Assembly: GCA_002104945.1 (NCBI GenBank)
Contig: MCFH01000014.1
Coordinates: 372,001-436,000, forward strand
DNA: 64,000 nt
Origin: Piromyces finnis finn
Taxonomy: Eukaryota > Fungi > Neocallimastigomycota
Direction: 5' to 3'
Below, piece by piece: positions 1 through 59,446 of the stretch. The notes beneath the pieces are model-generated. The model was not told the DNA's origin. It searched no databases and was given only the letters and a program-made list of their open reading frames with translations. The position numbers and the translations under genes are program-made. Positions within the stretch are counted from its first letter, which is position 1; the number at the start of each line of letters is the position of its first letter.

Positions 1-865
1 TTTAAATTTTATAAAAATGTTTTTATTAAAATTGCAAAATGTTATTAATCCTATAAAAATATACAAGAAGTAATTAAAAAATATTCAAATTTTCTCTCTT
101 TTTCTTTTTTTATTACTAAATATATAAATATAAAAGAAATAAATAAAATATATTTTTATTATAAAATTGTATTAGGTATACTATATTTTATAAATTGAAC
201 TATTTATTTTGATATGAAACATAGCTACAAATTAGTCCTATTTAAAATAATTTTTATTATTTAAAATATGTAATTTCATATTTAAAAATTTATATTAAAT
301 ATTTTATAATAATAATATAATAATTGATATATATTATAATATATTATTTATATATTAATTACAAAATATATTTACATATTTAATTATTTAATTATATTCT
401 TAAATATTAATATATATTAGTATTTATTTATTCCTATATTCATTATTAAATGTATAGTTACATTTTATTGTAATACTTATTTGTATTACATTATTTTTAC
501 TTTTATAGTAATATTTCTTTTAAAAATACTGTAAAATATATTATATTATATCCTATTTAATAATTATTCATATATTATTCATATATTACATTTTATAATT
601 GATATTCAATTATATTTAATTATAGGAATTTTATAATATAAAGATATTCATGAAAAATAATTAATAATAAAAGAAAGATTTAATATTTAATAATAAAATA
701 TAATAATTAAATAAGTGAAATTATTAGTAAGATAATTATAATAGTAAAATATTTTCACATAATATAATAAATTATAAATAAACTAATATTAAATGACTAC
801 AACATAAAAGAAACATATATAAGTTTGTATATCATTTATTAATTTCTATGTTAAATTTTATTTTT

Positions 866-987
866 AACATTAAATCAATTTACGTAATACGATAATTGGT
901 TAAAAAGGTACATTATATATAAATGTACATTATTAAACATTAAATCAATTTACGTAATACGATAGTTGGTTAAAAAGGTACATTATA
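866..987. repeat. Tandem duplication, ~52-bp unit at 70-bp period
   Basis: aacattaaatcaatttacgtaatacgata(a/g)ttggttaaaaaggtacattata occurs at 866-917 and 936-987 with one mismatch. Confidence 0.9.
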
Positions 988-1756
988 GTATTTAACATCA
1001 GCTTATATCTTTAATTTTATATATCCCATTGTTACTACTTATTGTGTATATTACATTATACAAAATTTATTCCATTTTATAATATATAATGTAATTTTAT
1101 ATAAAAATAAAAATATAAGTAATGCATGTTATATTAATTTATTTTTCAGTTTACATAGTTTACATGTATAATTTTAAAGTTACATCATATAGTTAATTTT
1201 ATTTTCGGTTTTAATATATTAAATATTGTTCGGTAATATGTCTTTTTTTTTTTTTTTATGATGAAGTTTTATATAAAAATATTATATAATTACTAATGGA
1301 AATAGAATGTGTAGAAGATATAAGATTTGTATTTGTAATATCAAAAAGTTTAATATAAGCTTTTTTCAATGATGCCTTCAAGTTCAAAATAATTGAACTT
1401 TATGCAAATTTAAATTTAATTTAGTATTTAATATAAATAAACAATAAAATGTAATCATTTTTTTTTATTTTCTATATATCATTACTTTTCATATTTGTAT
1501 AAATTAAGGAAATCATTTTTATTATTATAATAATTAAAAACTATAACCATTTTTATTATACTACATATAGAAATAACTATAAATTTAGTTCAAGAAAATG
1601 ATTTCCTTTCGCATCTTATAGGACTAGCTGATAATATTTAATGAATTTTTGAACTATTTCTGAATAAAACTTTTATCGATAAAACCTAAATAAATTAGTA
1701 TTTATTAACTTCAAAATTAATAAAATACTACTGTATTAGTAGAGGTATTTTCCAAA

Positions 1757-1978
<222 letters not shown>

Positions 1979-2207
1979 TATCATAATGTTTTAAAATAAA
2001 AAAAAATTATTCTATTTCATTTCATTTATTGTATAGTCCAAAATCTATAAAAGGTGGGGTAAAAAGTAGCCTTAAATATCTTTTTCTTTTTTTCTTTTTT
2101 TCTTTTTTTTAAAAAAAAAAAAAAATCAATACCAATAGGAATACAATTATTGATGCGAATATCCAGTCATTTATATAAAAAAAAATATTTGTTTTCTTTC
2201 AATTTTC

Positions 2208-2243: not shown

Positions 2244-5200
2244 CTAGGAAAAGGATACAAATCTTTTATTTATTTATTTAATTTGTGATTTTACATATTG
2301 ATATAATAAATAATAAATAAAAATAATAAAATATATATAAATAAAAATATAAATATAAAATAATATAAAATAATTATTTAAGTTGCATAAAAGTTCAATG
2401 AACTCTGTAATTTGTACTGTGTGGGATTGGTCCCTACCTAATAAATTAAATGAAATAAAAAAGAAAAGTAACATCAGGTATGATAGTGTGGTGTCCACTA
2501 AACTCTCCCTTGAGTTCATAATGTTTTCATTCGAAGAAATACTAACATTGAACCCTGTGTACGGAACACTGAGAATGTTCCTTTGCCATATCAATACGAC
2601 GTCGGCGCTCTTAATTACGCTAGGTGTCTTACTAAATCTATCAAAAAGTAGCTTCATAGAGCTACTAATTATAGAAATTGTTTTAGTAAGAAAAGCCGCG
2701 AGACCCTCTACCTATGGAACATGAGACCCCAATAAACTGTAAAGCTGTTCATTCAAATGTCTTTATTCCGCCTTATCGATTTGTAGCTCATCATAAGCTA
2801 AAGTTCCACCAAGAAGGAACGTAAAAATATAGTTATAAATTGTTTTTCTTACTTCCATTTCAGGGAGTAAGTATGTGATGAATTGATTCTTATATTTATT
2901 GTAAAAAAAGGGTAAAAGATCGTCAAGAAAGCAAAGTGAAGAAGTTCTGTATTCAGAGAATGCAGAACATTCTAATATCCAATGGTAAAAAGATTGTTCG
3001 TCATATCCGCAACATGGACAGACAAGAGGGCAGTCAGGAGTAACTCTATTACTGGCAATAGCAATTCGGGTAGTGTATTCATAACTGCATCGAATACGAA
3101 TAATCCAGATAATTCCTAAATTTAAGTGAGGTTTGTTGAGACCGATAGGCATTAGGCGATTTGAATTAAGGAATTTGTTGTTAGTATATCTGAGGGCTTT
3201 ACTTCCATTATTTAGGCTACTATTATTCCAATAATATTCTCTAATATCTTTAGTACTTTTAATATTTATTTCCATAAGCTTCTTATGAAGTGAACAAGAT
3301 TCTTTGGCCCAAGAGTAATGAGACATGGGAGGAATAGATCAGACGAGATCTTTAATAATACAATTTGATTTTCTCCATTTAACAAAGCATTTCACTTGTT
3401 GCGCAGCACAAATACCTGAAAGGGTAGGAATCTTCATATCTCTTGTAAGGGCATACAGACTAATAAATGAATTTCGTTCAAAAACAAAATCTTTGTTATT
3501 AAGACTTTTATTGTGGAAGCTATTGACACTCCATAAAACAGCAGTATTGATAAGAGATTGGACTCTTCTAGTTCTATTTTTGTTGGAACCAAGTAAAGGA
3601 GCATAATAAGAGACTTTGCTTAAAATATAGGAATGAATATTACTATATTTTTTAAGCCAATAGGAACACAGTTGTTAGTGAGGAAGCTCTTAAAAGAGAA
3701 TAAAGATTTCTGAACTTTTTTGTACATATTAGACAAAATAGGAGTCAGAGAAAGTTTTTCGTCGAATGGGATTCCAAGATAAGTATAGCAAGAAACCTTT
3801 GGAATCGAGTATATACTGATGTAAAATGTTGGGTCGACATAACTAAGGGATCTATTAAAGTTGATAGGCTTAACAACAATAGTTGCACATTTATTTATTC
3901 CGAAAGGCATTTCATTTAAATTAGCCCAATCAAGGACTAGATTGAGCATCTTTTGAAGGTTCTTCTTGCTAGGAGCAATCAGAACAACGTCATCGGCGAA
4001 AAGGCCACCACAGCAACATTTATTTCCTAAGCTAACTCCAAGCCTTTCACATTTACTTAAAATATCATTGATGAAGAGATTAAATAGAATAGGAGAAAGA
4101 GGACATCCTTGTCTTACACCACGATTGATAGGGAATTCATTAGAAAGCATATCCAAGAAACGTGCACGAGCTTTTGAGGTAGAGTAGAGATTATTGAGAA
4201 AATCAAAACACTTACTACGTATACCTAATTTATATAGCTTTGTAAGGATATTAAGAATAGGAACTGAGTCGTATGCTTTTTTAAGGTCTAGAAAAGCAAC
4301 ATAAGTGGCGTTTCCTTTAAATTTTCTTCTTTGACAGATTTCTCTATGGAAATAAATAAGCTAATGCATTCTTCTTTAATGCGAAAACCAAATTGCTCAG
4401 GTCTTATAAAATTATGAGAAAGAGCATACTTTGAAATTCTATCAGTTACAATTTTTGAAATGATTTTATGACCTACGTTGATGAGAGAAATACCACGATA
4501 ATTATTGCAATCTGAAAGATCGCCTTTCTTTGAAAAAGAAACAATGGAAGCAGAGTTCCATTTCAAAGGAAAGGATCCATTCCAAATTTTATTGAAAATT
4601 AATTTAAGACAATTTCCGGCAGACTTATGTTCTTTTTCCAGTTCTTCATTACAAAAGAAAGCTTTGAAGAATTCAATTGGGATACCATCGGGACCTGGAG
4701 CCTTATTATTCTTCATTGACAGAACAATATTTCTAATTTCCTCAATAGAAATGGGATCATTAATATCCCATGCTATTTGATTGATATGATTGAATTGGAA
4801 GACTCTCTCCCAGTAACTCCGATTTAAGCTATGATTTGTAACATCAGATGCAAGATTTTCATAATGTTCAGCCCGACGTTTTAATTGTTCTTGAGGAGTA
4901 AATAAATCCTTGCCATTCTTGTCCTTAAGAGTTGAAACATGAGAGGATGAATAACTTGGTCTGGCAAGTTTTTTAAGGCCTTTCCAACCTTGTCTAAAGC
5001 TTTTATCAATAAAATGTTTACCGATAGAAACAATATTAGCTTTATAGAGATTGGATCTGAATTTACTCTTAACCTTTTTGATAGTATTACATAAATTTTG
5101 GTATATGGAGAACTGGTTAAGATAATTATCCATGTCAACACAATCTGAAAGGGGTTTAATATTTTTGTAAGCCATAGAACTTTAGGATTAGCACGTCTAT

Positions 5201-22945: not shown

Positions 22946-25900
22946 TTATTCTTTATATTTAAATTTTTCATAAAGAAAGTTACGAAGGGCTGAAGTTTCT
23001 AGTCGATTCTCTTCAATTTTTTGATTTTCTTTTTCCTTTTTATTTTGACTGGAAGATGAAAGTGTTTTTCGTTTAATATTTTTCTTTTTATTAATTTTTG
23101 GTGCAACATAAGCCTCTATTTTTTTTTTTTTATTTTATTAACGTTAGTTAAACGGTTTAAAGATTTAAGTTTATAATAAAATTTATCTATCTATATATAA
23201 AATAAAATATAATATTTACTTGACGCTTTAACTGAGCTATTAAGATTATATGAAGGCAAGGAACTCATAAGAGACTATTATAATTAAATTATTATTATAA
23301 AAATAAATGATATACTCTTGCAATAATCATATTTATACTTTGGTATTTTTTTTTTTTTTTTTTTGACCTACCTGTGTTAATATTTGATTTGCTGATTTAT
23401 TTTTAATTTCAATATTTTTATTATAGGCAAACTTTTCTCTTAATATTAAATTAATATTTTTATTAGATTGATTATTATTTACTTTCTCAGAATGGGAAGT
23501 ATTTTGCTTATTTTCTTCTGAAAAACTTTCTTTTTTCATAACGTTTCTATTTTGTGAATTAGCGTTAATGTTTGTTAAATCTTCACGTTTACGCTTAAGA
23601 CTATTAGTGTTGAAACTATTAAGCATTTGACTAATATTGATTGTTGATGTACAACAATTATTAGTATGATTTGAATCATCACTATTGGTATCATCATTAT
23701 TTGAAGAATGATTTTGGGTTGTGGATGATTGGGTATTTGCTATTTTATTTTCACTATCTGCTTTTTTTGGATATACTTCGAAAACTTCTGGTAATATATC
23801 ATCTTCATTGTCTGATTTTGAGAATGTATCAAAAATATTAAGAAAAGATGAATTACTAGAAAAACTACCACCTTTATCATCGTCATAAAGGTAAGATATT
23901 GAATGTGAATGAATTTGGTTAGAATTATTAGAGGAATTTGATTTTTTATCTTCACTTTCATTTTCAATATTACTATTTTTATTATTACTACTATTATTGT
24001 TATTATCATTATTGATATTGTTTTTTTGACCAATGCACACTTGAACATTAGATTCTTCGTTGTTTTCATTTGATTTATTGTTACTTTCATTTTCACTATC
24101 ACTTATGTAAACAGGTTCTGGCTCATCTACAATCATTTTATTATTCTCATTATTCATTGATTCTATATTATCAACTTCTTGATCACTAAATTTCCTAGAA
24201 AAGTATGGACTTATATCTGAAACAGAAGCTGATTTCTTTAATAAAATATTATTTCTATTAAATAAAGATTTTAATTTACTTTTAGTGTCGTTTTTAATGT
24301 TTTGATTTAAATTTGATGACGCTCTTTCATTATTTTGATTAATTATATTTTCAATAGTTTTATCTGCTATTGAATTATTAGAAAAACTTGATTCAGGTAC
24401 AATGCTTTGCATTAAACTATTATTAACTCTTTGAATATTTAAAGGGTTATTCTCTTCCGTATCACTGTCTTGAATGTCGTCTATAATTATTCCATTATCA
24501 AGTGTTTTCTTTTCTTCCATAATACTTGTTAAATTATTTTTCATACTTGATTCATTATTATTCACTATATTTTTTTGCTTTTCAACTACATCTGCATTAT
24601 TATTTGAAGAATCAAAAACTTTTTTTAATTCTATTATATTTTTTTGCTTTTCAACTACATCTGCATTATTATTTAAAGAATCAAACAAACTTTTCAAGTT
24701 CTTTTTTTGATAGTTCGTAATTAGTTCTTGTCTATTATTACATTTAACGACTGGATAAGAGGTATGTCTATTAAGTTTTGGTGTGGTTGAACAACTTTTT
24801 TGTTTATTTGATAAAAAGTAATTTGAAATACTATTATTTGGTATAGATTGACTTTTGCTTTTATTTTTATTATTTTTATTAGAAGTAGTTTTAATATTAT
24901 TTTCCTTACTTTTTTCTTTATTACTTAATGGATTACCAGTATCCATTGTAGTGTTTTTTGTTGTTGATCTATGCTTTGAAAAAGAGTTATTTTTTGAGAA
25001 AAAGTTTTCTATTATTTTTACCTTTACATTTGAATTGTCGTTTTTTATTGGTTTTACACTTTTACTATTTATATTTTGTGAACATACTTTTTGTTTTGGT
25101 GTATCGTTTTTTATATTATCATCGGAGATATTACCATCAATATTATTATTTATTATTGATGAATTTTTTTTATTATTTTTATTAATGTTATTATCATCAT
25201 TATTATCATTAGTGTCCATATTATTATCTCTATTATTATTATTATTATTATTATGCAATGAGGTATCATTTAAGCAATTACTCTTAATATTTTCATTTTG
25301 ATTTATATTACTATTATCATTTTCATTATCACTTGAATTGAGAATTTCATCAATAACTATTGATTCATTTAGATTGATATTGCTTATTTCATTACTATAA
25401 TTATTATTTATATTAATTTCAATATCACTTGAGTTTGCTATATCATCAACATTATCAATAATCGATATTTCTGTAATGTTATTTTTTACAACTTCTTGTA
25501 TATGATATGACTTAGGTTTCTCTGGTAAATTATTATTGTTATTTTCATTACTTTTCTGAAACAATCTAATTAAGGAACTATTGTTTTTTTTTTGATTTCC
25601 ATTATTTAATGCATTTGTTAAAAAGTCACTTTTATTATAGTTCATTGTTACTTTAAATTGACTTGGTCGAAATAATTTATTAGCTTTTAAAGGTTCATTT
25701 TTAATATCTTTATTATTTGATGATTCTTCTGAATTGAATTGGTTTAATAATTCTTTGTAATGCGGATCAACTAATTCATTTGAATTTGGTTCCTTTGTTA
25801 GTGGGTTTAAATCACCTTTTGCAACACCTTCTGCTATTTCTTTTTCTAATAATCTATATATTTGATATTAAAAAATTAAAAAATAATATATAGTATAATA

Positions 25901-33486: not shown

Positions 33487-36400
33487 TTATTTTAGTCTTA
33501 TTAATAACTCATTAAATATCCATCGTCCTTCTTTTCCACCGTTAGTATTAAAGTTTCCTTGAACTAAATCCTTATTAATTAAAAATTCTAATTTATTGAT
33601 AAAGAGAGAATGCTTCGATTTCCATAAACTATACAATTCATCAATAGTATCTTTATCAATACGTTTACCAAACACCATATGATAACAGAATTTTTCTATA
33701 ATATTGAATATGTTATTTAATAGATTTTGAATCGGTTCAGCTGCGGAAAGAAGGAAACAACGATAGAGAATACATTTAAGGTAGTCATGATGAAGAAGGT
33801 AAAGGCCTTCAAAATTATATTCGATTTTTAATCCATGATAATTATGGGTTTTAGGTGCTGTTGCAGATAATAAATCATTATTCAATATTTCATAACTAGT
33901 AGAATGTTGAAGATTAGCTTTTGAGGTCTTTTTATGTGAGGATCTAAGAGACGTTGTTGATCGAATAGATCTTGTTTTATGATTAGAAGAATTGGAGGAT
34001 TTGAAAGATGAATTTTTTTCTTTACTTTTTGTGGAATACAAACTATAATTATCATTACTTGATTTTCTTTCGCTGCTATCTTGCGCCATTTCATTCTCAA
34101 TCTCACTACTATTAGCATCATCGCTCTTACTATCACTATCACTATCATCGTCATCATCATCATCATCATCATCAGGTTGATGATATTGATTACAAAATTC
34201 TTCAATATCAAGTACACAATCCATAAATTGTTGCCATGTTTGTTTTATAGCAATTTCATGAATGTAGTATGAAAATTGTTTTACAAAGTTTATGACTTCC
34301 ATTCTAAATTTTATTATAAGAGGGTAATTTAATACTTGTTGTCTTCCTTTGCCTGACCTTTTGGATAAATGAAAAACATTATTGAGCTGATCAACACAAT
34401 TTTGAAGAGCTAATAATTTTAGTAGGAAGGCCATAATTCTATTATATTTTTTAAGAATGGATGAAGTAATTTGAATATTGAGAGGGTATTTGGGTGTATA
34501 ATTTAAACTAAGAAAATCAAATCTTGATAAATCTATAAAATATATATTAAAAAATTTGTTAATTATATTAAATTTATTAAAATATTATTAATTTTTTTTT
34601 TTTTCATAAAAGTTATATATATATATTCTCTTATTTATATACACTAATTCTTAATAAGATAAAAATCTGAATAATAATAATAAAAAAAAAAACTTACTAT
34701 CACTGGTAACTTTATTATTATTTGTGAATATAAAGTTTGCTGTTGAAGAAATCAAACTATTATCATTTAAATTGTTTACTATTAAATTAAAATTGAGTTT
34801 CAATGGATTATTGATTTTCAAAACATTAATACCGTTTCTTGAATCAAAAAGAATATCTTTTAATTGACATACATAATTACCATCATTCATTAGATAAAAG
34901 GATGATAGTAATTTCAATTGTTGAACAAATTCTAGATTGACCATAAAATAATTCATTACAGAAAAATCAATTATTTCATTTTGTTTATTAATAGCATGAA
35001 TTACAGTATGTTCAAATATAGATGAAAATGGAGCACTAATTTCATAGCTTTCATTTAATGAAAAATTTAATGAAGAATTCGAAGAATTGAGTGGTTGTTG
35101 TTTTTTTTGTTGCTGATCTTGGTGTAATTTTACTTGAAAACTATTTATTTGTTTAGCATTATTTAAATAATTATTCATAAGAATAATATTAGAAAAGTCA
35201 AAATTATCAAAGTTATATTTGAATAATTTTAATTCATTAGTATTGATGTTTTCATCAATAATCTTGGGTATAAATTTTAATAAGGAATCTTTTGCATTTT
35301 GTTTTGCTTTTTTAGTGATTTCTGAATCATTTAGAATATCTTCATTATTATAATTTTGTGCTGTTTCTTTAGTTCTTTTTTCAAATTTTTTAGAAAACTT
35401 ATCATCTGTAGTAGAATGATTTACTGATATTTGATCATTAAATAAATTTAGAGATTGATTTAAGGAATAACCCAAAGAGCTTTCTTCTGGTTCAGAGTAA
35501 TCTTCAATCATCGAAATTTCATCACCACTATCTGTTGTAAATATATTTAACTTGTGTAAATTTTGATAACTTTTTGTTTTTTCAAGTTTTGGTTTTAAAA
35601 TGCCACCACCACCACCACCACCAATACTATTATTTTCTTTTTTTAATTTTGAACTAGTAATACTATTATTACTATTATTACTAACATTAAATTGTAATTT
35701 TTTACTTGACGTTTCAATCCCTAATTTTTGACTATTAATATTAATGTTACTATCTTTTGAAAGAGTATCTTTGTTGACGGAATCATATTCAATGTAATTA
35801 CTTTTTAGAGTACCATCATTATTCACTTCACTTTGATTTGTAGGGATACTAAATGGTTGAGTATTTATATTATTTAAAAGATCATCGTTTGAAAAGATGG
35901 AAGATGTCATTAAATTACCAAAAATACCTGTAGATTTTTTAAATCCAAAATATAAATTAAATGGATTTTTAATTTCTGGTTGAGATGGTGGAGGTTGTGG
36001 TGATGATGACAATTGGAATGGGGAAAGTGATAATAATGGATTAAAAGTGGTATTACCATTACTTAAGTTATTAATGTGATTATTATTTATTGTTGGTTGA
36101 GTGGATTTATGATAATCTTTTAACTTAAATTCACCATGATCATCCAAGGCAATACTTATAGTATCTACATTATCATTAAGATATTCAGTATTCATTGATG
36201 ATGGATTATTATCAGATGAAATAATTATTTTAGCTTCCTTATCTTTTTTTATTTCCGTTGATTTAATTTTATCATTAACATTTTCATTATTTACAGATGT
36301 TGATGGATCATCTTTGTTATTATTTATTTTATGAACTGAATCTACACTATCATTATTTTCCCTTATTATTATTTCTGAATTTGTATTATTGGTATTTTTA

Positions 36401-39400
36401 TTGTGTTCTACATTTGATAATACATGACTTAAATTGTTTTGAGATTCACTTTTTAACATAATATTTTCTGTAACCTGATTGATAATACTTTCTTGATCAA
36501 CTCTATTATTAAGTATTTGAGATTGTTTCAAGGAATTATTAGTATCAGTATTATGACGATTATGATTATTATTTTTATTATCATCATTATCATCTATTTT
36601 GTTTGAATTTATTGAATTCTCATCCGATATCCATTTACGTTTATTTCCATGATCATATTCTGAAAAATGTGCCTCTTGTGTTTTATCAGATGACATTTTA
36701 TATTCTAAATCTTTCATTTTAGCTTCATATTCTCTTTTCATTTCTTTTGAAAGTAAATTGATGGCATCTTGTTTAAGTTGTTCTTCATTTTCTTCTTCAT
36801 CTTTTATTTTTTGAAGTTTTTCATTTTCTTGTTCTTTCTTTTTTTGCTTTAAAATTTGCATATTCTTAAAAATTGCGATAAAGATAAATGAAGTAAAAAA
36901 AAAAATATATATTTATAAAAATAAAAAATTAAAAGAAAAAAAAATTAAATGATTAATAAATTAACGATTATCAATAAATTAAATTATTAGTGATATTTAA
37001 TATAGTTTACCTTTAATTCATTATAATACTTTTGTTTTTCTTTTTGCTTTGAAAGATTTTGTTGAAGTTTACTTTCTCTTCTTGTATGTAATCTTTGTTT
37101 TTCCTATTTTTTTTTTATTTTAATAAATAATTATTTTTAATTTATTAATCATTTATCATTTCAACTATTTAATTTAAAAAATAATCCCTATATATTTATA
37201 AAGATGGATAGATTGTAAATTAAAAGTGAATATAAAATCTATTTTTTTTTGAAAATTTACTTTTTTGTCTTCACTTAACATTTCTAATTTTTTTTGTTCT
37301 TCCAATCTTTTCTTTTCATTTTTTATGTTAGTGGTCATAATATGTATATTATTTTTTATCTCTGTTTCATAGATATTTAGTGACTGGTGTAATTTTTCTA
37401 TATTATTTTCATTAAATATCCAGTATATAAATGTTTTTGATTCTTTATAATTATAAAATAAGGGATGATCCGGACAGCATTCTTTTAACAATCTTAAACA
37501 TTTTCCAGAATGGAATAATTTTTCAGCAAGTTTTTCTGGTATAAAACTGGGTATTTGAATATTTATATCAATCTATTATAATATATATATAATTATTATT
37601 ATTATTATTATTATTGTACAAAATAAAATTATTTGATTTTAAATTATTTAATATCTTTAATATTATTAAAAATTTATTATAATTTTTTTTAGTATTTTTT
37701 TTTTTTTACCTGCCATTCATGTGTCCAAAATTGATCACCATTTTTAGACTCTTCTTCCGAAATTGAAGTGGATGTTTGTTTTTCGGATGGGGAGAGAGGT
37801 TCTATGTAGTGAATATAAAATTCATGATGATAATCATTTAAAGAGTAAAATTCATTATCACTTAAATTATCTAAACCAATCCACATTTTAATCCAATTAA
37901 AATAGAGTTCACTAGAATCTTTTAATAATGAATATATCACATATTTAAATAAAGTTTCTCTATAGGTCATTAAATTAGAAGAAAAATCGTAGATACAAGC
38001 GTTTTCATATAAAATAGAAAGTAATTGTGGTGATTTTATTTTTAAGGATTTAAAATCATCGGATGCCTATTTTTTAATTTTAATTATTAATATAAATATT
38101 TATTTTAAATGCAATGCTTTACCAAAAACTATTTTATTTATATAATAATGAAATAATATTATTTTTGACATACATTACATGCACAAAGGCGAGATAACAT
38201 ATTGATTTGATATATAAATTGCTTTAAAACATTATTTAATTCAAGAATATGAATTTTTTCAATGAGTTTAGAATTCATTAATCCAATAATACAGGCTCTT
38301 ACAAAAGAGAGGTAGGATGCCAAAGAATGTGAAAATGATATACCAATTAAACCATATATTCTTTTTTTTTTTATAGACAGGATTATTAAAAGAAAGACAA
38401 TAATAATTTTTAATACAGCATTAAAAAAAAAAAGAGTTTATTCTTTTAGCCATTACTATTAATATGTACATATATTAAATATTATAATATAAATATATTT
38501 ACTCTGGATTTGACTGATATATTTTTGTTAGTTTCTCTAATCTTTTAAAATTTGTTCCCATATCCAAGTAAGTTTGTATATATTTCGATAGACTTTGACC
38601 GTCACACCCAACAATTCTTAAATATTGAATTTTAATATTTTTTATTGAAAATTGTTCTTTTGAGGTATCATAGATAAAATTTCGTGATGATATACCAACA
38701 ACCATATTTAATATATCCTTTTTATCATCATCAAGATATTAAAAAAAAAAAAAAGTTAAAATGTTATAGATAAAAAAAAAATACTTTAATAATAACAGTA
38801 TTAATATTAATATTAATAGTTATTACTTTAATAAGATCTTTTTCTTCCACAATCTTATTATATTGTCCATAAGAATATTGATGATTGTAGTACCTTTTTT
38901 ATTCGTTATTATTTAATATTTAAAAATACTATTAGCTATTTATTTACTTTTTAATATTAATTTTATTATTGAAATGAAATTTTTTAAAAATGGTTTCTCT
39001 CTCTCTCTCTCTCTATTTACATACAATTGATAAACTTCTTCATATAAACTCAAATTCACTTCTGATAGATATGGCGATTGAAAAGGTATTCCATTATCAT
39101 AGGAGTAAACTTTATTATCTTTATCTTTTAAATCCCAATTATTTGATTTTGACTAATATATTTAAAAGTGTTTTATATTAATATTAATAAATACTTTAAA
39201 ACATATATATATATATTATATTTATAAAAAGATAAATTCATTTACAGTTAAAAATGCTTTTTTCTTTGGAATTTGATTCCATAATTGGTAATTATTACCA
39301 CTTTTATAAGCCTCCTTGTGTTCATTTTTCGGTTTATCCTTTTCTATATTATCATTGTAATTAGTATTTTTTTTAAAAGTAGTTGAAAAATTTTGAATGT

Positions 39401-47606: not shown

Positions 47607-50519
47607 TTTGATTTTTATTTTAATTAACAAGGAAATAAATATGTTATTTTTTGTATTTTATTTTTTTTTTTTTTTTTGATTTATTTGTGTTGAATTTTTT
47701 TTTTTTTTTTGTTAATAAATAATTGTTATATATATATATTATTTTATATTATATTATTGTTGTATTATAGTAATAGTATATTATAAATACTAAAACTATT
47801 CTTTTTATTAATACACAATAAGTAATTATAATGTCAACTTTTTTTTTAAAAAAATAAAAAAAAAGAAATTTATATATATAATTTAACAAAATTTTAAAAG
47901 TTTAAAATATGTTGAGAAATACTGCTTCTTTTATATGAATATTAATTTTTATATTCAATGATATATAAAATTAATAAATAATAAAATAAAGAAAAAAAAG
48001 CTTATTTATTAAGGAAGATTAGTGTTATTAAAAAAGTATATATATTTAACCCTATATACCATGTTATTTATTGATAATAAATTTAAGGATTAAGTAGAAT
48101 AGAAACGTTTAAAAGAAATAGTATATATCAATAATAAATTAATAATATAAATATTATTCTATTCTAATATATAATAATTTAATACAATAATAAATAAATT
48201 AAACAAGAGAATACGAAAAAACAAAAGAATTATTAAAATATAATGAATATAATAGGAAATTTTAATTTATTTTATAATAAATTAAATTAAATAATAAAAT
48301 ATTAATTTAGGTTATACAAAAATATAAATGAAAAAATTAATGTAATTTAATATATTTGAATATATTTATTTAATATATATTCATATATTATTCAAACATT
48401 TAAATTCTGAGATTTACAATATTAAATAGTATTAAAGTTTATATATATGAAATAAATTTCAACCTAAATAATATATTTTTTAATTATAAATCAATATAAA
48501 TCAATGAAATAAATAATTTCTACAATATATAAATAATATATAAAATCGAAAAAGATAATTAAATTTATAATATTAATATATTAGTTAATTAATAAATATA
48601 TAATTTCAATATAAAACAATAAAATTAGTATATTAATATCATTTCATTTTCAATATAAAATTTAATAAATTAATTTTTTTAAAGATATTGAAATAAACTT
48701 TTATTAATATATTATTATACAAAGAAATAAATTAAATTTTTATAATAAAATAATAACAATAAATTAAATATATTAATAAATTAATACATATAATAAACTA
48801 ATAATAATTTACATAGCATAATATTAATAAACAATAGTAAAGATAATCATTCTAAATTTTTTATACTATGGATTCAAGCGGGTTTCAATAGGCATGGTAA
48901 AATTATACTACCATTTTTAAATATTTCCTTAACGAAATGGCAAAGTCGATGTATTGGAATTTAATATTTAAGTATTTATTTTTTTTTCATTATTCATCCA
49001 TTTATATTTAAAATTAATTCATTATTTATTCGCTATATGGTAAAGATTAAAATAAGTCCTAGTGTATTAATAAACTTTTAACAAAGAATATCTTATCATA
49101 TGTATTAATTCTATTATAATTATAATGAATGGATATGCTATTCCTATTATTGCTGTTGCTATATAGAGTTCATTAATTGTATATATACTTTTCTTTTATT
49201 ATAAAGATTATTAGAAAGGGCTACTTTTTTAGTGGTAAAAAATAACAACAACTAAAATTGCTTAACATTTCTTCTTACTAATTTTTACTTCTTACAGCAA
49301 CAATAAGCAATAAAATTTTAATTTAAAGTACAATATATAAAGTTAATGTATTGGCATCTATTGAAATATATTAAATAATATAAAAACACAAGAACAATAT
49401 TTCATGCTTTGGAATGTTGAACGGAAGGTGTGTGTAGCGAAAGAATTAATAAAAGTAGAATAATTTTACTATTATATTATATTGAAAATAATAATAATTA
49501 AAGTTTAATTTTAAATTAAAAATAAATTTTATTTTATATAAAATAAATTAAAATTTTATATTAAATCAAAATATTCTTCAAAAAAAAATGAATGATTTTT
49601 TTTAAAAAAATGAAAAAGTAAAATTTCTATTTAATTTTTATATATTAATTTACGGCAAAAAAAAACCAAAAAAAAAAAAAAGACAAAAGTTTGCCATAAC
49701 AAAAATATATTTTATAAAAGAGAAACTCATTTAGTTTCTAATAATAATAATAATAGAGTTTTATGTTAACTAAATAAAAATAAAAAGATTATCTGAATAT
49801 TTTTAATCCCTATTTTATATTTTATTAATATGACATCATAATACATTCAAAATAATTAAAGTTTACTTTTTATCAAAATTCATGGCTTTTTCTTTCTATA
49901 CATTTTTTGTTTGTACAACAATAAAAAATACTATTTTCCTAACCTTTTAAATGCCTCCATTTTATATACCTCTATTTTTTTATTAATTAAAATTTTTTTG
50001 AATAACAATAATTATACCTGTGTTACCTAAATTATTATCCAATAATAAACAAGAAAAAAAAAAAGTAAATTGAAGAAATTTATATATATTTAAAAAAGTT
50101 CGATAATTTATTTGGAAGGTCGTTAATATATATTTCATTTGTAGGCCTAAAGTAACACTTTTTAATCAACACAATAGAAATAATAATAAATAAAATAATT
50201 GTTTATACTTATTTAATATAAATTCCTCTTGTGTTTTTAAAAAGAAGCTGATAATTTATAATTTCATTGATTTATCCTTTTTTTTTTTTTTGGATTTTTA
50301 TTATATAAATAGAGTTTCTATATTCTTAACACTTCTTTTCTTTTATATTCACTATTTTCATCACAAAATTCATAACTGAAGAAGTTACTATCAGTAGAAC
50401 AATGATAAGTATTTATTATTATTTATGTATACTTCATGTACTTATGCATTACTAATTAATTTAATCCAATATTGGATCATATGAAATCACTTTATTATAA
50501 ATTATTACATAGTTAGTTC

Positions 50520-51800
50520 TGCAATTTTTTTTTCTGTTCAATATTAATAAAAGATTTTTTCTTCGTATCAGCAAAAACAGATGGCATCAGAAAATTAATT
50601 ATTATTATTATTAATAATCAAATTTATAGTATAACTGAAAACTTTTCAGTAGAATTTATAAGAGAAATTGAAGGTAATTTCCATTTAATATTGGATTGCA
50701 AATTTATTAATAATACTTTTATCCCTTTTGATATTTTATACCGTGAATTGGATTTAAGAAGTTACTCTTACAAAGAAAGAATAAACATTCTTAATTCTTT
50801 AGATTACCTTAAATTTGAAAAATTATAGTTAAAAAAGTTATAAAATGCTGTAAAATTTTTTTCAAGATATTCAAACATTTGTATCATCGGAATTAGAAAA
50901 TACCACACCAAACGATGGTATTGTCATAACCAGCGGAGCATCAACCTATTTTGAAAATGCTAAAGCTTATAAAATTAAAACTATTTACACAGTAGATATC
51001 GAGTTTAATGGACGCTATTTTTTAGCTAGGGAGCATAGAATGAATATATCTTTTAAATTTATCAGTAGAAAAATATAAAAATATATGTATAATAAGTTTA
51101 AAGTACAAAATCACAAAACTACAAACCCTATTGAAAAGTATTATTATAGAAAGAAAATAGAAATTATAGAAGGCGTACCATGCAACAAAAAAGTAGTTAA
51201 ATATTATCATATTAAAAATAAAAAAATAAATTTTATTATAGAGTATGATTTAGATAATAAAAAATATATTAATTTTTGCAAAGATAAAATCAAATAGCAT
51301 AAAAATATTTAATAGTGTTTTATTGGTTTCCTATCAAAAAATCAATATTGATATTTTTTCACCTAAATCCAATGTTTTAATGCGTAAATACCACAATATA
51401 ATAAAACAAAATATTTTAAATGAATTTAGAGGAACTTTATTAGATATCGGTACAGGCAATGGTGGTGATATACACAAGTGGAATCATTTCCCGTAAGATC
51501 GTTTGTGTTGAACCAAACCATGAAAAATTAAAAATTTAAATAAAAGAATTTCAAATTCAGAAATTAAAAATAGAATCAAAATTATCCCGAATAATATTCA
51601 AGAAGAGATGTTAAATGATCATTTTGATATTACCACATGTTTTTTTGCATTAAATGGTATGTCTTATACCGACATAGCATAAACGATAAAAAATATCAAA
51701 AATTGTATAAGAAAAACATTTATTGAATTATTTTTCGATTCTTCAATTTAGTGAAAATATAACTTCAACATCACTAATTTATCGAAAATGTATTATTAAT
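50520..51800 (+). pseudogene. Virus-type mRNA capping enzyme (guanylyltransferase + guanine-N7 methyltransferase)
   Basis: FVSAKTDGIRK (KTDG 50574-50585), LILDCK, FIPFDIL, RINIL, PNDGIVI (50914), YKIKTIYTVD (50968-50997), FCKDK, then MRKYHNIIK (51380), LLDIGTGNGGDIHKW (DIGTGNGGD 51443-51469), IVCVEPN, FDITTCFFALN. Several stops and frameshifts. Confidence 0.9.
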
Positions 51801-52321
51801 GAAAATAATAAAATTATAAATACAACCGATAAATTATCATTAACCTATCTGTTAAGTTGCCTTAGATATACGTATGGTGAATGCGATAATATAATGTATG
51901 TAAATATTCTTCTTTTCTTAAAGGCATTGAATTTTCAAATAATATTCCTTAAAGAAAAAAGAAAGACAATTAAGGAAAATATAGTAAAATATATAATTAT
52001 TATTACTTTTATAATTATTATAATTATTTTTATTATTATAATCATTATTATTTCATCATTTATAATATTTAAGATTTATTTCAATAAAAGGATTTATATA
52101 AAGATTTTTATTATTTAAAACATATATATATATATATATTAAAAAGAAAATGTAAAAAAAAAAAGAAATCTTTAGAAAATATAATAAAATAAATTAAAAA
52201 GATTATTTAATATTAAAAGTACCAATTTAAATTCAAAGGGTAAATCAAATAAAAAAGTGAAGTTAAATTTCAATTCAAGTATACGTTTTCATTTGGGAAT
52301 TAATAGTTCACTGTTGTTAAG

Positions 52322-53010
52322 ATGTATGAATTAATTCATACTTTCGATTTCAGTGAAAACCCTGAACTGAAAAATAAAATATTGAAAATATTTCTCAAAA
52401 ATATACCTGTTTTACCCATAAATATGAGACTTTCAATTATGGATTTCAACAATATCATAATTCATAATAGTATAACATCCATGTATATAAGACTGTTAGA
52501 TTTAAATCATCAGTTTCAAAGTAACACCAATATTATTTCGTATGGTGGATATGGATTAAAAGTATTCAATCTATATAAAAAAATTCTTGGAATTTATAGT
52601 TCCACCGATACTACGGAAAATTCTGATAAAAATTTTATTAAACAAAGATTATCGGGAAAAACGGATTTTTAAAAGTATGTGTATAGTCAAAAGACAAAAT
52701 TTTTGTCTTAGTAGTGTTATTGTGCCAAATATAAATATTCCCTTGGATAAAATATTGATATCAAAAAAATTTATAGATCAATTAATTCCCCATGGATATA
52801 AGCCAAATGACTATGTAATTATTAATAGACAACCTACACTCCAAACTACTTCTATATTATCTGTTCGCTCCTTTCTAGCAGTCGGACCATCCAAATTAAT
52901 CCTCTAATAGCCAGCGTTTTTCAAGCTGATTTTGACGAGAATGAAATGAATTTTTTTGGCTGCTGGGAGAAGAATCTAAAAAAGAATTAATCCTGTTGTT
53001 TTCATGCTAT
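52322..53010 (+). pseudogene. Reduced multisubunit RNA polymerase largest-subunit (beta-prime/Rpb1-type) fragment
   Basis: IPVLPINMRLS (region B), KQRLSGKT / KRQNFCLSSVIVPN (region C), YVIINRQPTLQTTSI, then after a frameshift TIQINPLIASVFQADFDENEMN (52922-52951; decayed NADFDGDEMN) and LGEESKKEL. Confidence 0.9.
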
Positions 53011-53543
53011 TTAGTGCAAAAGCCATTTCGGTTCGAAAGTTCATTAACTAAATTAAATCGTTGGTGGTAGAAGTTCCACATCCTATTTATGAATACAATG
53101 AATTTAAAAATTCTAAATGTTTTTGCAAGGCCCGAGAACTTGCTTGTGAACTTGACTTTACTATTCAATGGTAGTAAAATTATATTCATTTTATTTATTT
53201 CACGATATTAAAATCATTTTAAAAGATAGGATTCTATTATATTAAATATATATAATTACAGATAAATTATATAAAGTTTATTTATGTATAATATATATGT
53301 ATAATCTCTTTCTATATCATTTTTAATTCATAACGTTCAATACAAGATGTATTAATTCTACATTTTAAGTTTAATGAAATTTAAAATTTAAAAATTATAA
53401 AAATTTTTATTGATTAAAAATCATTAAAATTTAAAATTTAGAAAGTTTGAGATTGATAAATCGAAAATAATTCTCAATAGTAGTACCATTCTTTTTTATT
53501 AAATAATTTATACTAAGCTGAGCTTTTACAATTGTTTTAATTC

Positions 53544-53694
<151 letters not shown>

Positions 53695-54446
53695 AATATC
53701 AATAATTAAACAATTAAATAAAAATTTTTAATAATAACAATATTATTTAATAAAATGTTTGAATTTTTTTATCTAAGAACCAAATTGTTTAATTATTTTA
53801 AATAATTTCTACTTCTTACAAAGATTGATATAAAAATTATTTATTATTATTATTAATTAATAAAAGTTAACTATATCATATTTTCTTTAATAGTATATTA
53901 TATAACTTATTAATATAAGTAGCACAAAATATTGTCCACCATTATATTAATTTAATTAAAATTTATATTTAAAAATATATTTATATTAAATTTTTTATAA
54001 ATATTTTAAAACTTTATAAATAATTATTATTACTTTTTATTTATTATTAATTTAAATAATTAAATAATAATAAATTAAGGTAAATAGATTTATAATGTCT
54101 TTTTTTTTTTATTTTTCCTTTATTTTAATTAAATAATATTAATTAAGGTTACTGTAGTACAAATCATATCCAAATTATGGAAAATTTTTGGTAATTTAAT
54201 TCAATAATATTTTCCTTTATATATAATAAATTTGTTAAACAAAAATTTTTTAAAAAATATGTTATTATTAAATTCCTTTTTTTTAAAAAAAAATAAAACA
54301 AACTATTGAATTAAACAATTAAATATTTTATAATTGTTTGATCACTTTATATATTTAATATATATTTTATTTATTATATATTTTTATTTTATATTATTTA
54401 TTTTATAATATTTATTTTATGTTTTTATTTATTTTTGTAATATCAG

Positions 54447-55024
54447 TAACTCCCTTACATATAGCCTTATTTTTTTATAATAAAGATATTATAGATATAT
54501 AAATTAGGTATGGAGCTAAGATAAATATAAGAAATAGCATAGGAGCTACGCCAATACTTAAATTATGTGAGGTTTATTGGTATGATAATATTAATATGGA
54601 AGAAGTTTTAAAATTATTTATTAATTATGGTACTAATATTTATATAAAGGATAACGATAAAAACACCGCATTATATTATGCTGTTAGAGGATTTAAAGAA
54701 AAGGCAATAGACTATTTATTGAAAAATAATTTTGATGTTAATATGCAAAATATCAATGGTGATACACCATTACATATGGCTTGTAAAGATATAAGGGGTG
54801 ATGGAGAAATGATGCAATATTTAGTAGAAAGAGGAGCGGATGTCAACATAATCAATAATAAAAGTGAGACTCCCTTGTTTTGTTTATGTAACTGTACTTA
54901 TAAAGATGAAGGTATGCCATTATTAGTAGAAAGTGGAGCAGATATAAATATAGCAAATAATAAAGGTGAAACACCATTGTTAATATCTTGTAAATATGGA
55001 AAAGAAGATTTATCTAAGAAATAA
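54447..55024 (+). pseudogene. Ankyrin-repeat gene, probably disrupted
   Basis: TPLHIAL, GATPIL, NTALYYA, GDTPLHMAC, ETPLF, GETPLLISC; in-frame TAA at 54500-54502 and an abrupt stop mid-repeat at 55024. Confidence 0.75.
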
Positions 55025-55603: not shown

Positions 55604-56590
55604 ACAAGAATTCAAATTATTTATCACATGAATAGATTAAAGATATATTTAAATACGACATCGATGATATGATAGGAATATGTAATGATTTATTAGATCG
55701 TCATAGATAAATTCACTGTCTTTTCTTTTTATCATTTTAAAAAAGTTTCTTTTTTGTTATAGATTATGAATGGTTTTGTATATAACATTCTTTCTTTTAT
55801 GGAAATGAATTAATATAACTTTTGGATCTTAGTAACCTATTTACTATATAGAAATATGCTGGAACTATTTTATTTTGAGTATTGTTTTTTGTAATGGATT
55901 ATATGTATTACTATACATTATAATTATTATTTAAAAATAATTAATATTCTTTTTAAAGGTAAATGTGGGATGTATTGTATGATTTAAAATAAATGAATGA
56001 TAATGAAACTAAATAAAATTTAAAATGAAATTTAGTGTTTTTTTTCTTCTTGCTACTGATTTATTATTTTTTATTATTTTACTTTAAAAGTTTAAAGATA
56101 ATAGCATAAACTATCTTTTTTTTTAATTCAACAATATAATAAAAGAAAAGGTATGATTTACTTTAATATTTAAATCCTTTTTTTTTTTTTTTTTACTTTA
56201 ATATATTATTTCAATTTATTATAAACAATTGAAATGAACAAAATTTCTGTTTAAATTAATCCATTTTTAATACTAAAAAATAAATGTAACCAAAATTTAA
56301 AGTTTTAAGACTTTCATTTATAAAATAAAAAGTACATATATTATTATTATATTCTAATATATATTATAATTTATTAATTGAATAGATTTAAAATAATTAC
56401 CATTTACAACATTTACAATAACTACTTTATTATAAAATCAATCAAGATATATTTATAATAATAAAAGGTTCTCATTAAAGAAATTGTATTTTTTAATATA
56501 TATATATATATTTATTTCTTAGTTTCTAATTATAATTATCATTATCTATATTGTAATGATTATTGCTATATTGCTATTGTTGTCATTATT

Positions 56591-59446
<2,856 letters not shown>

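What the first reader, a model, noticed from the sequence alone, without database searches (positions are those of the whole stretch)
52322..53010. Stripped-down RNA polymerase beta-prime with a mutated catalytic motif
Seen: regions B, C and D in order, but only ~15 aa separate the region C tail (DKILI) from the NRQP segment, versus roughly 70 aa in cellular Rpb1 (my estimate from memory). The active-site loop reads QADFDENEMN instead of NADFDGDEMN. Established: yeast linear-plasmid RNAPs are the classic minimal multisubunit polymerases. Inference: a dead copy of a miniaturised RNAP, possibly from an undescribed clade.
Basis: partly seen in the sequence, partly recalled or inferred. Interest (0 to 1): 0.8.

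Follow-up and report, generated by a model that had tools for sequence, protein, structure and literature searches.

The report
Dead giant-virus RNA polymerase fragment
This is a broken, truncated leftover of a virus-derived RNA polymerase gene in the nuclear genome of the anaerobic gut fungus Piromyces finnis; it belongs to a family of giant-virus-like insertions already reported from this fungus, so it is a fairly ordinary molecular fossil of an unusually compact polymerase.

Summary
The + strand at 52.2-53.0 kb carries regions B, C and D of a beta-prime/Rpb1-type polymerase (Pfam PF00623, E 8.7e-7). The gap between region C and the NRQP segment is short, and the catalytic loop reads DFDEN instead of DFDGD.

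The window is Piromyces finnis scaffold MCFH01000014.1. The fragment is 90-92% identical in DNA to an intact 721-codon paralogue elsewhere in that genome, but covers only codons ~111-374. By my alignment it has six frameshifting indels and two stops, and it lacks both ends. It is a pseudogene.

The short spacer and the Q before ADFD are family traits, not damage. Every intact relative has both. About 20 further protein clusters of 660-745 aa share the short spacer: 35-54 residues against 88-100 in canonical enzymes. They come from chytrids, Sphagnum moss and gene-dense virus-like metagenome contigs.

Intact relatives start with beta-prime region A, not a beta part. They sit near PolB, D5, an SNF2 helicase and Rpb2 pieces. 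That matches the endogenous NCLDV-like "fundsalphavirus" elements of Gong et al. 2020, not a yeast-plasmid Orf6 fusion and not a host Pol I/II/III copy. A decayed viral capping-enzyme gene lies just upstream.

The parts
52206..52988 (+). Remnant of the N-terminal gene of a split viral-type RNA polymerase largest subunit (beta-prime-N / RP1n). It corresponds to about codons 111-374 of a 721-codon intact paralogue. It is broken by six frameshifting indels and two stops, lacks the 5' end, has lost the 3' two-thirds, and its catalytic loop is altered at two positions.
   Evidence: Pfam PF00623; blastn 90-92% to L003; tblastn with intact relatives; alignment A1
50517..51736 (+). Decayed mRNA capping enzyme gene (guanylyltransferase with the KxDG motif, followed by a cap N7-methyltransferase), of the same viral lineage.
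   Evidence: Weak Pfam hits to PF01331 and PF03291. The best PDB hits are capping enzymes and cap methyltransferases. Collinear tblastn matches to the 648-aa gene next to beta-prime-N in virus-like contig L008 (E 1.7e-4, 0.024, 1.2e-11) and to the 693-aa gene of L010
52989..53172 (+). Last ~61 codons of the gene that follows the polymerase gene in the paralogous locus L003 (205/216 aa, no known family).
   Evidence: blastn 90.7% to L003 12990-13172; tblastn 87% identity, E 1.7e-29
54503..55021 (+). Ankyrin-repeat open reading piece. It is a neighbour; similar ankyrin genes flank the paralogous block in L003. Host or viral origin was not decided.
   Evidence: Pfam Ank families, E 1e-26; tblastn to the L003 ankyrin genes

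Best explanation
The region is a non-functional fossil of a virus-derived gene in the nuclear genome of Piromyces finnis. It descends from the N-terminal gene (RP1n) of a split, unusually compact largest RNA polymerase subunit. That gene is carried by NCLDV-like elements that have integrated many times in anaerobic gut fungi. In an intact element this ~720-aa protein would supply the zinc clamp core, the catalytic aspartate loop and the bridge helix. It would work with a separate Rpb2-like subunit, a separate C-terminal piece and a fused GTase-MTase capping enzyme to transcribe and cap the element's own genes; this step is inferred from the family. The window copy cannot do this. It keeps only about codons 111-374, has six frameshifting indels and two stops, lost the rest to truncation and one ~2.4-kb deletion relative to its closest paralogue, and has lost the third metal-binding aspartate. 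The short spacer and the Q before ADFD are inherited family traits. The decayed capping-enzyme gene next to it shows that a multi-gene block of the element was inserted, or copied within the genome, and then eroded.
For: Host identity: the 116-aa piece is a called gene on P. finnis GCA_002104945.1 MCFH01000014.1; host-type genes in the window include a fungal dockerin CBM_10; no tRNA or rRNA. Family: word search found 23 relatives, all from Neocallimastigomycota genomes or metagenomes, and two close fragments. Intact 721-codon paralogue with Pfam Rpb1 domains 1-5. Decay: coverage of nt 331-1121 of 2163, six frameshifting indels, two stops; no Rpb1_3-5 part anywhere in the window; the homology then jumps to the tail of the next gene. 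Family traits: 7 of 8 relatives read QADFDGDEMN and all have the same spacer. Compact clade beyond gut fungi. Element context: L006 has beta-prime-N, Rpb2_6/7, D5_N and DNA_pol_B; L004 has an SNF2 helicase. This is the gene set of Gong et al. 2020, who list P. finnis as a host. Virus-like contigs L008 and L010 carry a compact beta-prime-N with PolB, UDG, XPG and TFIIS. The best viral structural matches are metagenomic pithovirus-like RNAP subunits.
Against: The window itself holds no PolB, D5, Rpb2, helicase or capsid gene, so assignment to the element rests on paralogous loci. Affinity to a named NCLDV order is weak: about 20% identity to the best BFVD hits, and my rough NJ tree does not resolve deep nodes. 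I did not look for the RP1c partner. The first piece is annotated as a 116-aa protein in public databases, and I did not check expression.
Confidence: 0.9

Rival explanations
1. It is a fragment of an integrated yeast-type cytoplasmic linear plasmid (VLE, pGKL2 Orf6 type) polymerase, that is, a beta/beta-prime fusion.
For: It is compact, AT-rich, ends after the bridge helix like Orf6, and has a capping enzyme gene next door, as on pGKL2 (PMC6211774). VLE-like contigs have been reported in a chytrid (PMC13348850).
Against: Intact paralogues start with beta-prime region A, a zinc motif and a Pfam Rpb1_1 match, with no beta part, whereas the VLE enzyme lacks most of the clamp. Rpb2 is a separate gene in L006. 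The linked DNA polymerases are PF03104/PF00136, next to a D5-like primase-helicase. No beta remnant was found upstream in the window. I could not fetch Orf6 itself for a direct alignment.
Confidence: 0.03
2. It is a decayed duplicate of a host nuclear polymerase gene (Rpa1, Rpb1 or Rpc1) with a copy-specific deletion.
For: The best sequence matches among solved structures are Pol II Rpb1 and archaeal A'.
Against: Single pieces match yeast Pol I only at E 0.24. Identity to cellular enzymes is about 20%. The short spacer is present in every relative, including intact ones. Intact relatives are 717-724 aa and stop after the bridge helix. Neighbours in paralogous loci are viral hallmark genes.
Confidence: 0.02
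3. The remnant, or its annotated 116-aa piece, has been co-opted by the host as a small protein or RNA.
For: A gene model exists for the first piece in the public annotation.
Against: Codon changes against the intact paralogue are about as often nonsynonymous (29) as synonymous (26), and come with six frameshifts and two stops. No family or structure hit for the piece alone. The piece is an arbitrary slice of a clamp domain.
Confidence: 0.04

Closest known systems
Endogenous NCLDV-like elements of fungi ('fundsalphavirus'), Gong, Zhang & Han 2020, Virus Evol (PMC7017919)
   Same: Same host species list, which includes P. finnis. Same gene set in paralogous loci (PolB, D5, SNF2 helicase, methyltransferase, Rpb2, and RNAP subunit 1 split into N- and C-terminal genes). 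Same state of decay with stops and frameshifts. Moss relatives, and affinity to pithovirus-like viruses.
   Different: That study probed with PolB and described flanking genes. This locus has no PolB and is a stray polymerase and capping-enzyme block. As far as the text I read goes, the compactness of RP1n (short spacer, ~720 aa) is not discussed there.
Split Rpb1 of pithovirus-like and marseillevirus-like giant viruses (BFVD entries such as Pithovirus LCPAC104 RNAP subunit, 905 aa)
   Same: Best structural matches (E 2.6e-42). The largest subunit is a separate N-terminal polypeptide that ends near the bridge helix.
   Different: Only about 20% identity, and the targets are 830-1380 aa against 717 aa. 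The family here lacks about 57-60 residues between region C and NRQP.
Archaeal RNA polymerase subunit A' (Rpo1N)
   Same: Same split point after the bridge helix. Top PDB matches by fold and near-top by sequence.
   Different: A' is 880-907 aa and keeps the canonical spacer. No phylogenetic link is implied.
Yeast VLE polymerase pGKL2 Orf6/Orf7 (PMC6211774)
   Same: A miniaturised multisubunit-type polymerase, with beta-prime divided after the bridge helix and a partner capping enzyme.
   Different: Orf6 is a beta/beta-prime fusion that lacks most of the clamp. This family is a stand-alone beta-prime-N with a clamp and zinc motif, and a separate Rpb2.

Membership tests
Multisubunit RNA polymerase largest subunit (beta-prime / Rpb1 / A') | Active-site domain (Pfam PF00623) with the NRQP segment and the aspartate loop | tested here: met
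   Window pieces score E 8.7e-7 (above the gathering score) and 3.6e-4
Multisubunit RNA polymerase largest subunit (beta-prime / Rpb1 / A') | Three metal-binding aspartates in the DFDGD loop | tested here: not met
   The window copy reads DFDEN. Seven of eight relatives keep DFDGD. So it is a member by descent, not by function.
Multisubunit RNA polymerase largest subunit (beta-prime / Rpb1 / A') | Domains 1, 3, 4, 5 (clamp, pore, funnel, bridge helix) | tested here: not met
   Absent from the window. Present in intact paralogue L003.
Fungal endogenous NCLDV-like elements (Gong et al. 2020) | RNAP subunit 1 split into separate N- and C-terminal genes | tested here: inconclusive
   The N-terminal gene ends after the bridge helix in intact relatives. 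I did not look for the C-terminal gene.
Fungal endogenous NCLDV-like elements (Gong et al. 2020) | Linkage to PolB, D5 primase-helicase, SNF2 helicase, Rpb2 and a methyltransferase | tested here: met
   Met in paralogous loci L006 and L004. In the window itself only the capping GTase-MTase remnant is linked.
Fungal endogenous NCLDV-like elements (Gong et al. 2020) | Resides in nuclear contigs of Neocallimastigomycota, including P. finnis, with stops and frameshifts | tested here: met
   930-kb P. finnis scaffold; break counts; paper text
Fungal endogenous NCLDV-like elements (Gong et al. 2020) | Groups with NCLDV polymerases in phylogeny | tested here: inconclusive
   The best BFVD folds are pithovirus-like, but at ~20% identity. 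The rough NJ tree is unresolved below the family.
Yeast VLE polymerase (pGKL2 Orf6 type) | Beta and beta-prime fused in one polypeptide | tested here: not met
   Intact relatives start with beta-prime region A. Rpb2 pieces are a separate gene. Nothing beta-like lies upstream in the window.
Yeast VLE polymerase (pGKL2 Orf6 type) | Most of the clamp (beta-prime a1-a10) missing | tested here: not met
   Zinc motif and Pfam Rpb1_1 match in L003, P0019 and P0026. The definition is from PMC6211774.
Host Pol I/II/III largest subunit | Close similarity and canonical spacing | tested here: not met
   E 0.24 to Rpa190 for a single piece. Spacer 38 against 88-100.

The most novel reading that the evidence does not exclude
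The intact paralogues could belong to a recently or still active, compact NCLDV-like virus lineage of anaerobic gut fungi. The evidence is 721-724-codon open frames in 20%-GC DNA, dN/dS about 0.14, and two 99%-identical copies in a palindrome. The dock-less, split ~720-aa largest subunit, shared with chytrid, moss and metagenome relatives, would then mark a distinct miniaturised polymerase grade between ordinary giant-virus polymerases and the minimal yeast-plasmid enzyme.
Probability: 0.2. Interest if true: 0.6.

Novelty: new member of a known kind. Interest (0 to 1): 0.3.

Why it matters
The locus is one more eroded copy of a virus-derived gene family already reported from this fungus. It corrects a public annotation: a 116-aa 'protein' there is a pseudogene slice. 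It also shows that viral blocks in P. finnis are scattered beyond the PolB-linked sites used to find them. The by-product is more useful. The family's intact members, with about 20 related clusters from chytrids, moss and virus-like contigs, share a largest subunit that is about 170-190 residues shorter than archaeal A' or pithovirus-like homologues. It lacks the segment between region C and NRQP. That is a clean structural marker for tracing this viral lineage and for asking how such polymerases start transcription.

Tried and rejected
- Organelle or bacterial origin: rejected. No tRNA, rRNA or Rfam hit, and eukaryotic host genes are present.
- Scan of IMG/VR viral contigs with the central piece: no relative.
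- PDB search with the single pieces: only marginal hits.
- Region A remnant or beta remnant at 51.7-52.2 kb: nothing credible.
- First structure prediction from 7 sequences: unusable, pLDDT 40. The second, from 44 sequences, was good, pLDDT 81.
- NJ tree to test monophyly of the compact group: unresolved, 21% support.
- Supplementary tables of Gong et al.: not held, so I could not check whether this scaffold is on their list.
- The Mycodnaviridae paper does not mention gut fungi or this polymerase.
Poxvirus, iridovirus and ASFV entries appeared only as low-ranked named hits of the fold search and I did not fetch them.
- I made no read-through, joined or consensus version of the broken gene; the pieces were searched apart.

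Full report
**What is there.** The window is about 20% G+C and has no tRNA, rRNA or Rfam match. It carries eukaryotic genes, among them an Agd3-type deacetylase with a fungal dockerin (CBM_10) and a gamma-tubulin complex component. The 116-aa open piece at the start of the finding is a called gene on Piromyces finnis GCA_002104945.1, scaffold MCFH01000014.1 (930,273 bp). So this is nuclear DNA of an anaerobic gut fungus.

**The observation.** Two of the three open pieces match Pfam RNA_pol_Rpb1_2, with E 8.7e-7 (above the curated cut-off) and E 3.6e-4. The catalytic loop reads QADFDENEMN. About 21 residues lie between the region C tail and NRQP.

**Relatives.**
- Single pieces find only marginal matches among solved structures; the best is yeast Rpa190 at E 0.24. 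They find nothing in IMG/VR.
- The word search found two fragments at 69-79% identity. Searching with the neighbouring 345-aa gene of one of them found 23 relatives. All come from Neocallimastigomycota genomes (P. finnis in at least six gene models, Piromyces sp. E2, Orpinomyces, Neocallimastix, Anaeromyces) or from metagenome contigs.
- One P. finnis locus, L003 on MCFH01000062.1, holds an intact 721-codon frame. It has beta-prime region A with its zinc motif, regions B-F, and a stop shortly after the bridge helix. Pfam finds Rpb1 domains 1 to 5 in it.
- In the alignment, seven of eight relatives read QADFDGDEMN and all carry the same short spacer.
- The Q and the spacer are therefore family traits. 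Only the G-to-E change and the loss of the third aspartate are specific to the window copy.

**State of the window copy.**
- At DNA level, window 52206-52988 is 90-92% identical to L003 and corresponds to nt 331-1121 of the 2163-nt frame.
- Against that paralogue I count six frameshifting indels and two stops in the reference frame. Of 256 comparable codons, 26 changed synonymously and 29 nonsynonymously.
- The first ~110 codons have no counterpart.
- Nothing in the window matches domains 3-5.
- Directly after the remnant, homology resumes in the last ~61 codons of the gene that follows the polymerase in L003. This implies one deletion of about 2.4 kb relative to the paralogue.
- The copy is a pseudogene fragment, not a stripped-down working enzyme.

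**What family it comes from.**
- A profile of intact relatives searched against 1.84 billion representatives found the gut-fungus family first. Next came about 20 clusters of 660-745-aa proteins that match in one uninterrupted stretch.
- Named members of those clusters come from the moss Sphagnum troendelagicum and the chytrids Gaertneriomyces, Geranomyces and Boothiomyces. The rest are from metagenome or read-archive contigs.
- The distance from the RSVI motif of region C to NRQP is 35-54 residues in this group and 88-100 in most canonical hits.
- Against solved structures the profile matches Pol II Rpb1 (E 4e-41) and archaeal A' (E 6e-39). It skips about 57-60 of their residues between region C and NRQP. 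From memory of the Pol II domain map this is the dock domain; I did not test that.
- A model of a 717-aa family member (pLDDT 81) matches archaeal Rpo1N and Pol II Rpb1 best in the PDB. Among viral models it matches metagenomic pithovirus-like polymerase subunits best, at about 20% identity.
- A rough neighbour-joining tree supports the gut-fungus family (100%) but nothing deeper.

**Element context.**
- In P. finnis locus L006 the polymerase gene lies with Rpb2 domain 6/7 pieces, a D5-like primase-helicase and a family B DNA polymerase (PF03104/PF00136). In L004 it lies near an SNF2 helicase.
- This is the gene set that Gong, Zhang and Han (2020, PMC7017919) describe for endogenous 'fundsalphavirus' elements, including RNAP subunit 1 split into N- and C-terminal genes. 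P. finnis is among their hosts, pithovirus is the nearest known virus, and moss sequences fall inside the group.
- Two gene-dense metagenome contigs carry an intact compact beta-prime-N with PolB, UDG, an XPG-type nuclease and TFIIS.
- In one of them the next gene is a 648-aa GTase-MTase capping enzyme.
- Three open pieces upstream in the window (50517-51736, + strand) match that gene collinearly, with E 1.7e-4, 0.024 and 1.2e-11. They carry the KxDG nucleotidyl-transferase motif and a cap-methyltransferase SAM motif.
- The window therefore holds an eroded two-to-three-gene block of such an element. It holds no PolB, D5, Rpb2 or helicase.

**Rivals.**
- The yeast-plasmid Orf6 idea fails on architecture. 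Orf6 is a beta/beta-prime fusion that lacks most of the clamp (PMC6211774). This family is a stand-alone beta-prime-N with a clamp and zinc motif and a separate Rpb2.
- A host Pol I/II/III pseudogene fails on similarity, spacing, length and neighbours.
- Co-option of the annotated 116-aa slice has nothing in its favour except the gene call.

**Mechanism.**
- Shown: descent from the family, the decay, and the altered catalytic loop.
- Inferred from the family: in an intact element the ~720-aa protein provides the catalytic aspartate loop and bridge helix. It acts with Rpb2-like and C-terminal subunits and the capping enzyme to express the element's genes.
- Speculative: the missing spacer segment suggests a different way of engaging initiation factors.

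**Side observations.**
- L003 is a palindrome with ~9-kb arms, 95-100% alike, each arm holding an intact polymerase frame.
- Two intact P. finnis paralogues differ with dN/dS about 0.14 and dS about 1.7. They diverged under purifying selection, most simply as viruses before separate insertions.

I made no read-through, joined, consensus or repaired version of any gene. Pieces were searched apart, and only counts were taken from the alignment across frameshifts. I did not type or fetch Orf6, pox or other named viral comparators; they were seen only as named hits. However, the output of my script and my notebook entries give bounds of open pieces and of the junction with the next gene, and these imply where some breaks lie. 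I have not repeated those here and have deleted nothing.

**Verdict.** The 'dead copy of a miniaturised polymerase' reading is right. The plasmid link and the 'undescribed clade' are not supported. Novelty: a new member of a known kind. Interest is low to moderate (0.3).

Noticed in passing
window 50517-51736 (+): Decayed fused GTase-MTase mRNA capping enzyme gene of the same viral lineage. It is collinear with the capping gene that sits next to the polymerase gene in virus-like contig L008. In the window it lies upstream of the polymerase remnant; in L008 it lies downstream.
   Followed up: partly
L003 1-21662 (P. finnis MCFH01000062.1, 204791-226452): Large palindrome with arms of about 9 kb, 95-100% complementary. 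Each arm carries an intact 721-codon polymerase frame, a 205-aa gene, a chitin-binding gene and an ankyrin gene. It may be a real inverted duplication or an assembly effect.
   Followed up: partly
L003 6798-8960 (-) versus L004 9536-11707 (+): Two intact paralogues in one genome differ with dN/dS about 0.14 (dS about 1.7). Frames of more than 720 codons are kept open in ~20% G+C DNA. This suggests recent insertion or continued selection.
   Followed up: partly
L008, L009, L010 (ERZ27258666, ERZ27258652, ERR11554255): Gene-dense contigs with an intact compact beta-prime-N, PolB, UDG, an XPG nuclease, TFIIS and a capping enzyme. They look like free or recently inserted genomes of the compact-polymerase lineage. 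Host and sample type were not examined.
   Followed up: no
window 52322-52669 (+): This slice of the pseudogene is carried as a 116-aa protein in NCBI, UniRef and EukProt. It is an annotation artefact.
   Followed up: yes
window 4288-5172 (-): Open frame with a weak reverse-transcriptase match (PF00078, E 3e-5), probably a retroelement remnant. The surrounding 2-6 kb has higher G+C (~30%).
   Followed up: no
window 53434-53727 and 56560-56830: Long simple repeats that read as poly-Asn, poly-Ile or poly-Leu depending on frame. The first lies between the viral remnant and the ankyrin piece.
   Followed up: no
window 23333-25645 (-) and 34651-36861 (-): Two long open frames (770 and 736 aa) with no Pfam family at E <= 0.01. 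They were not studied further.
   Followed up: no
window 1-2000: Extremely low G+C (12%).
   Followed up: no
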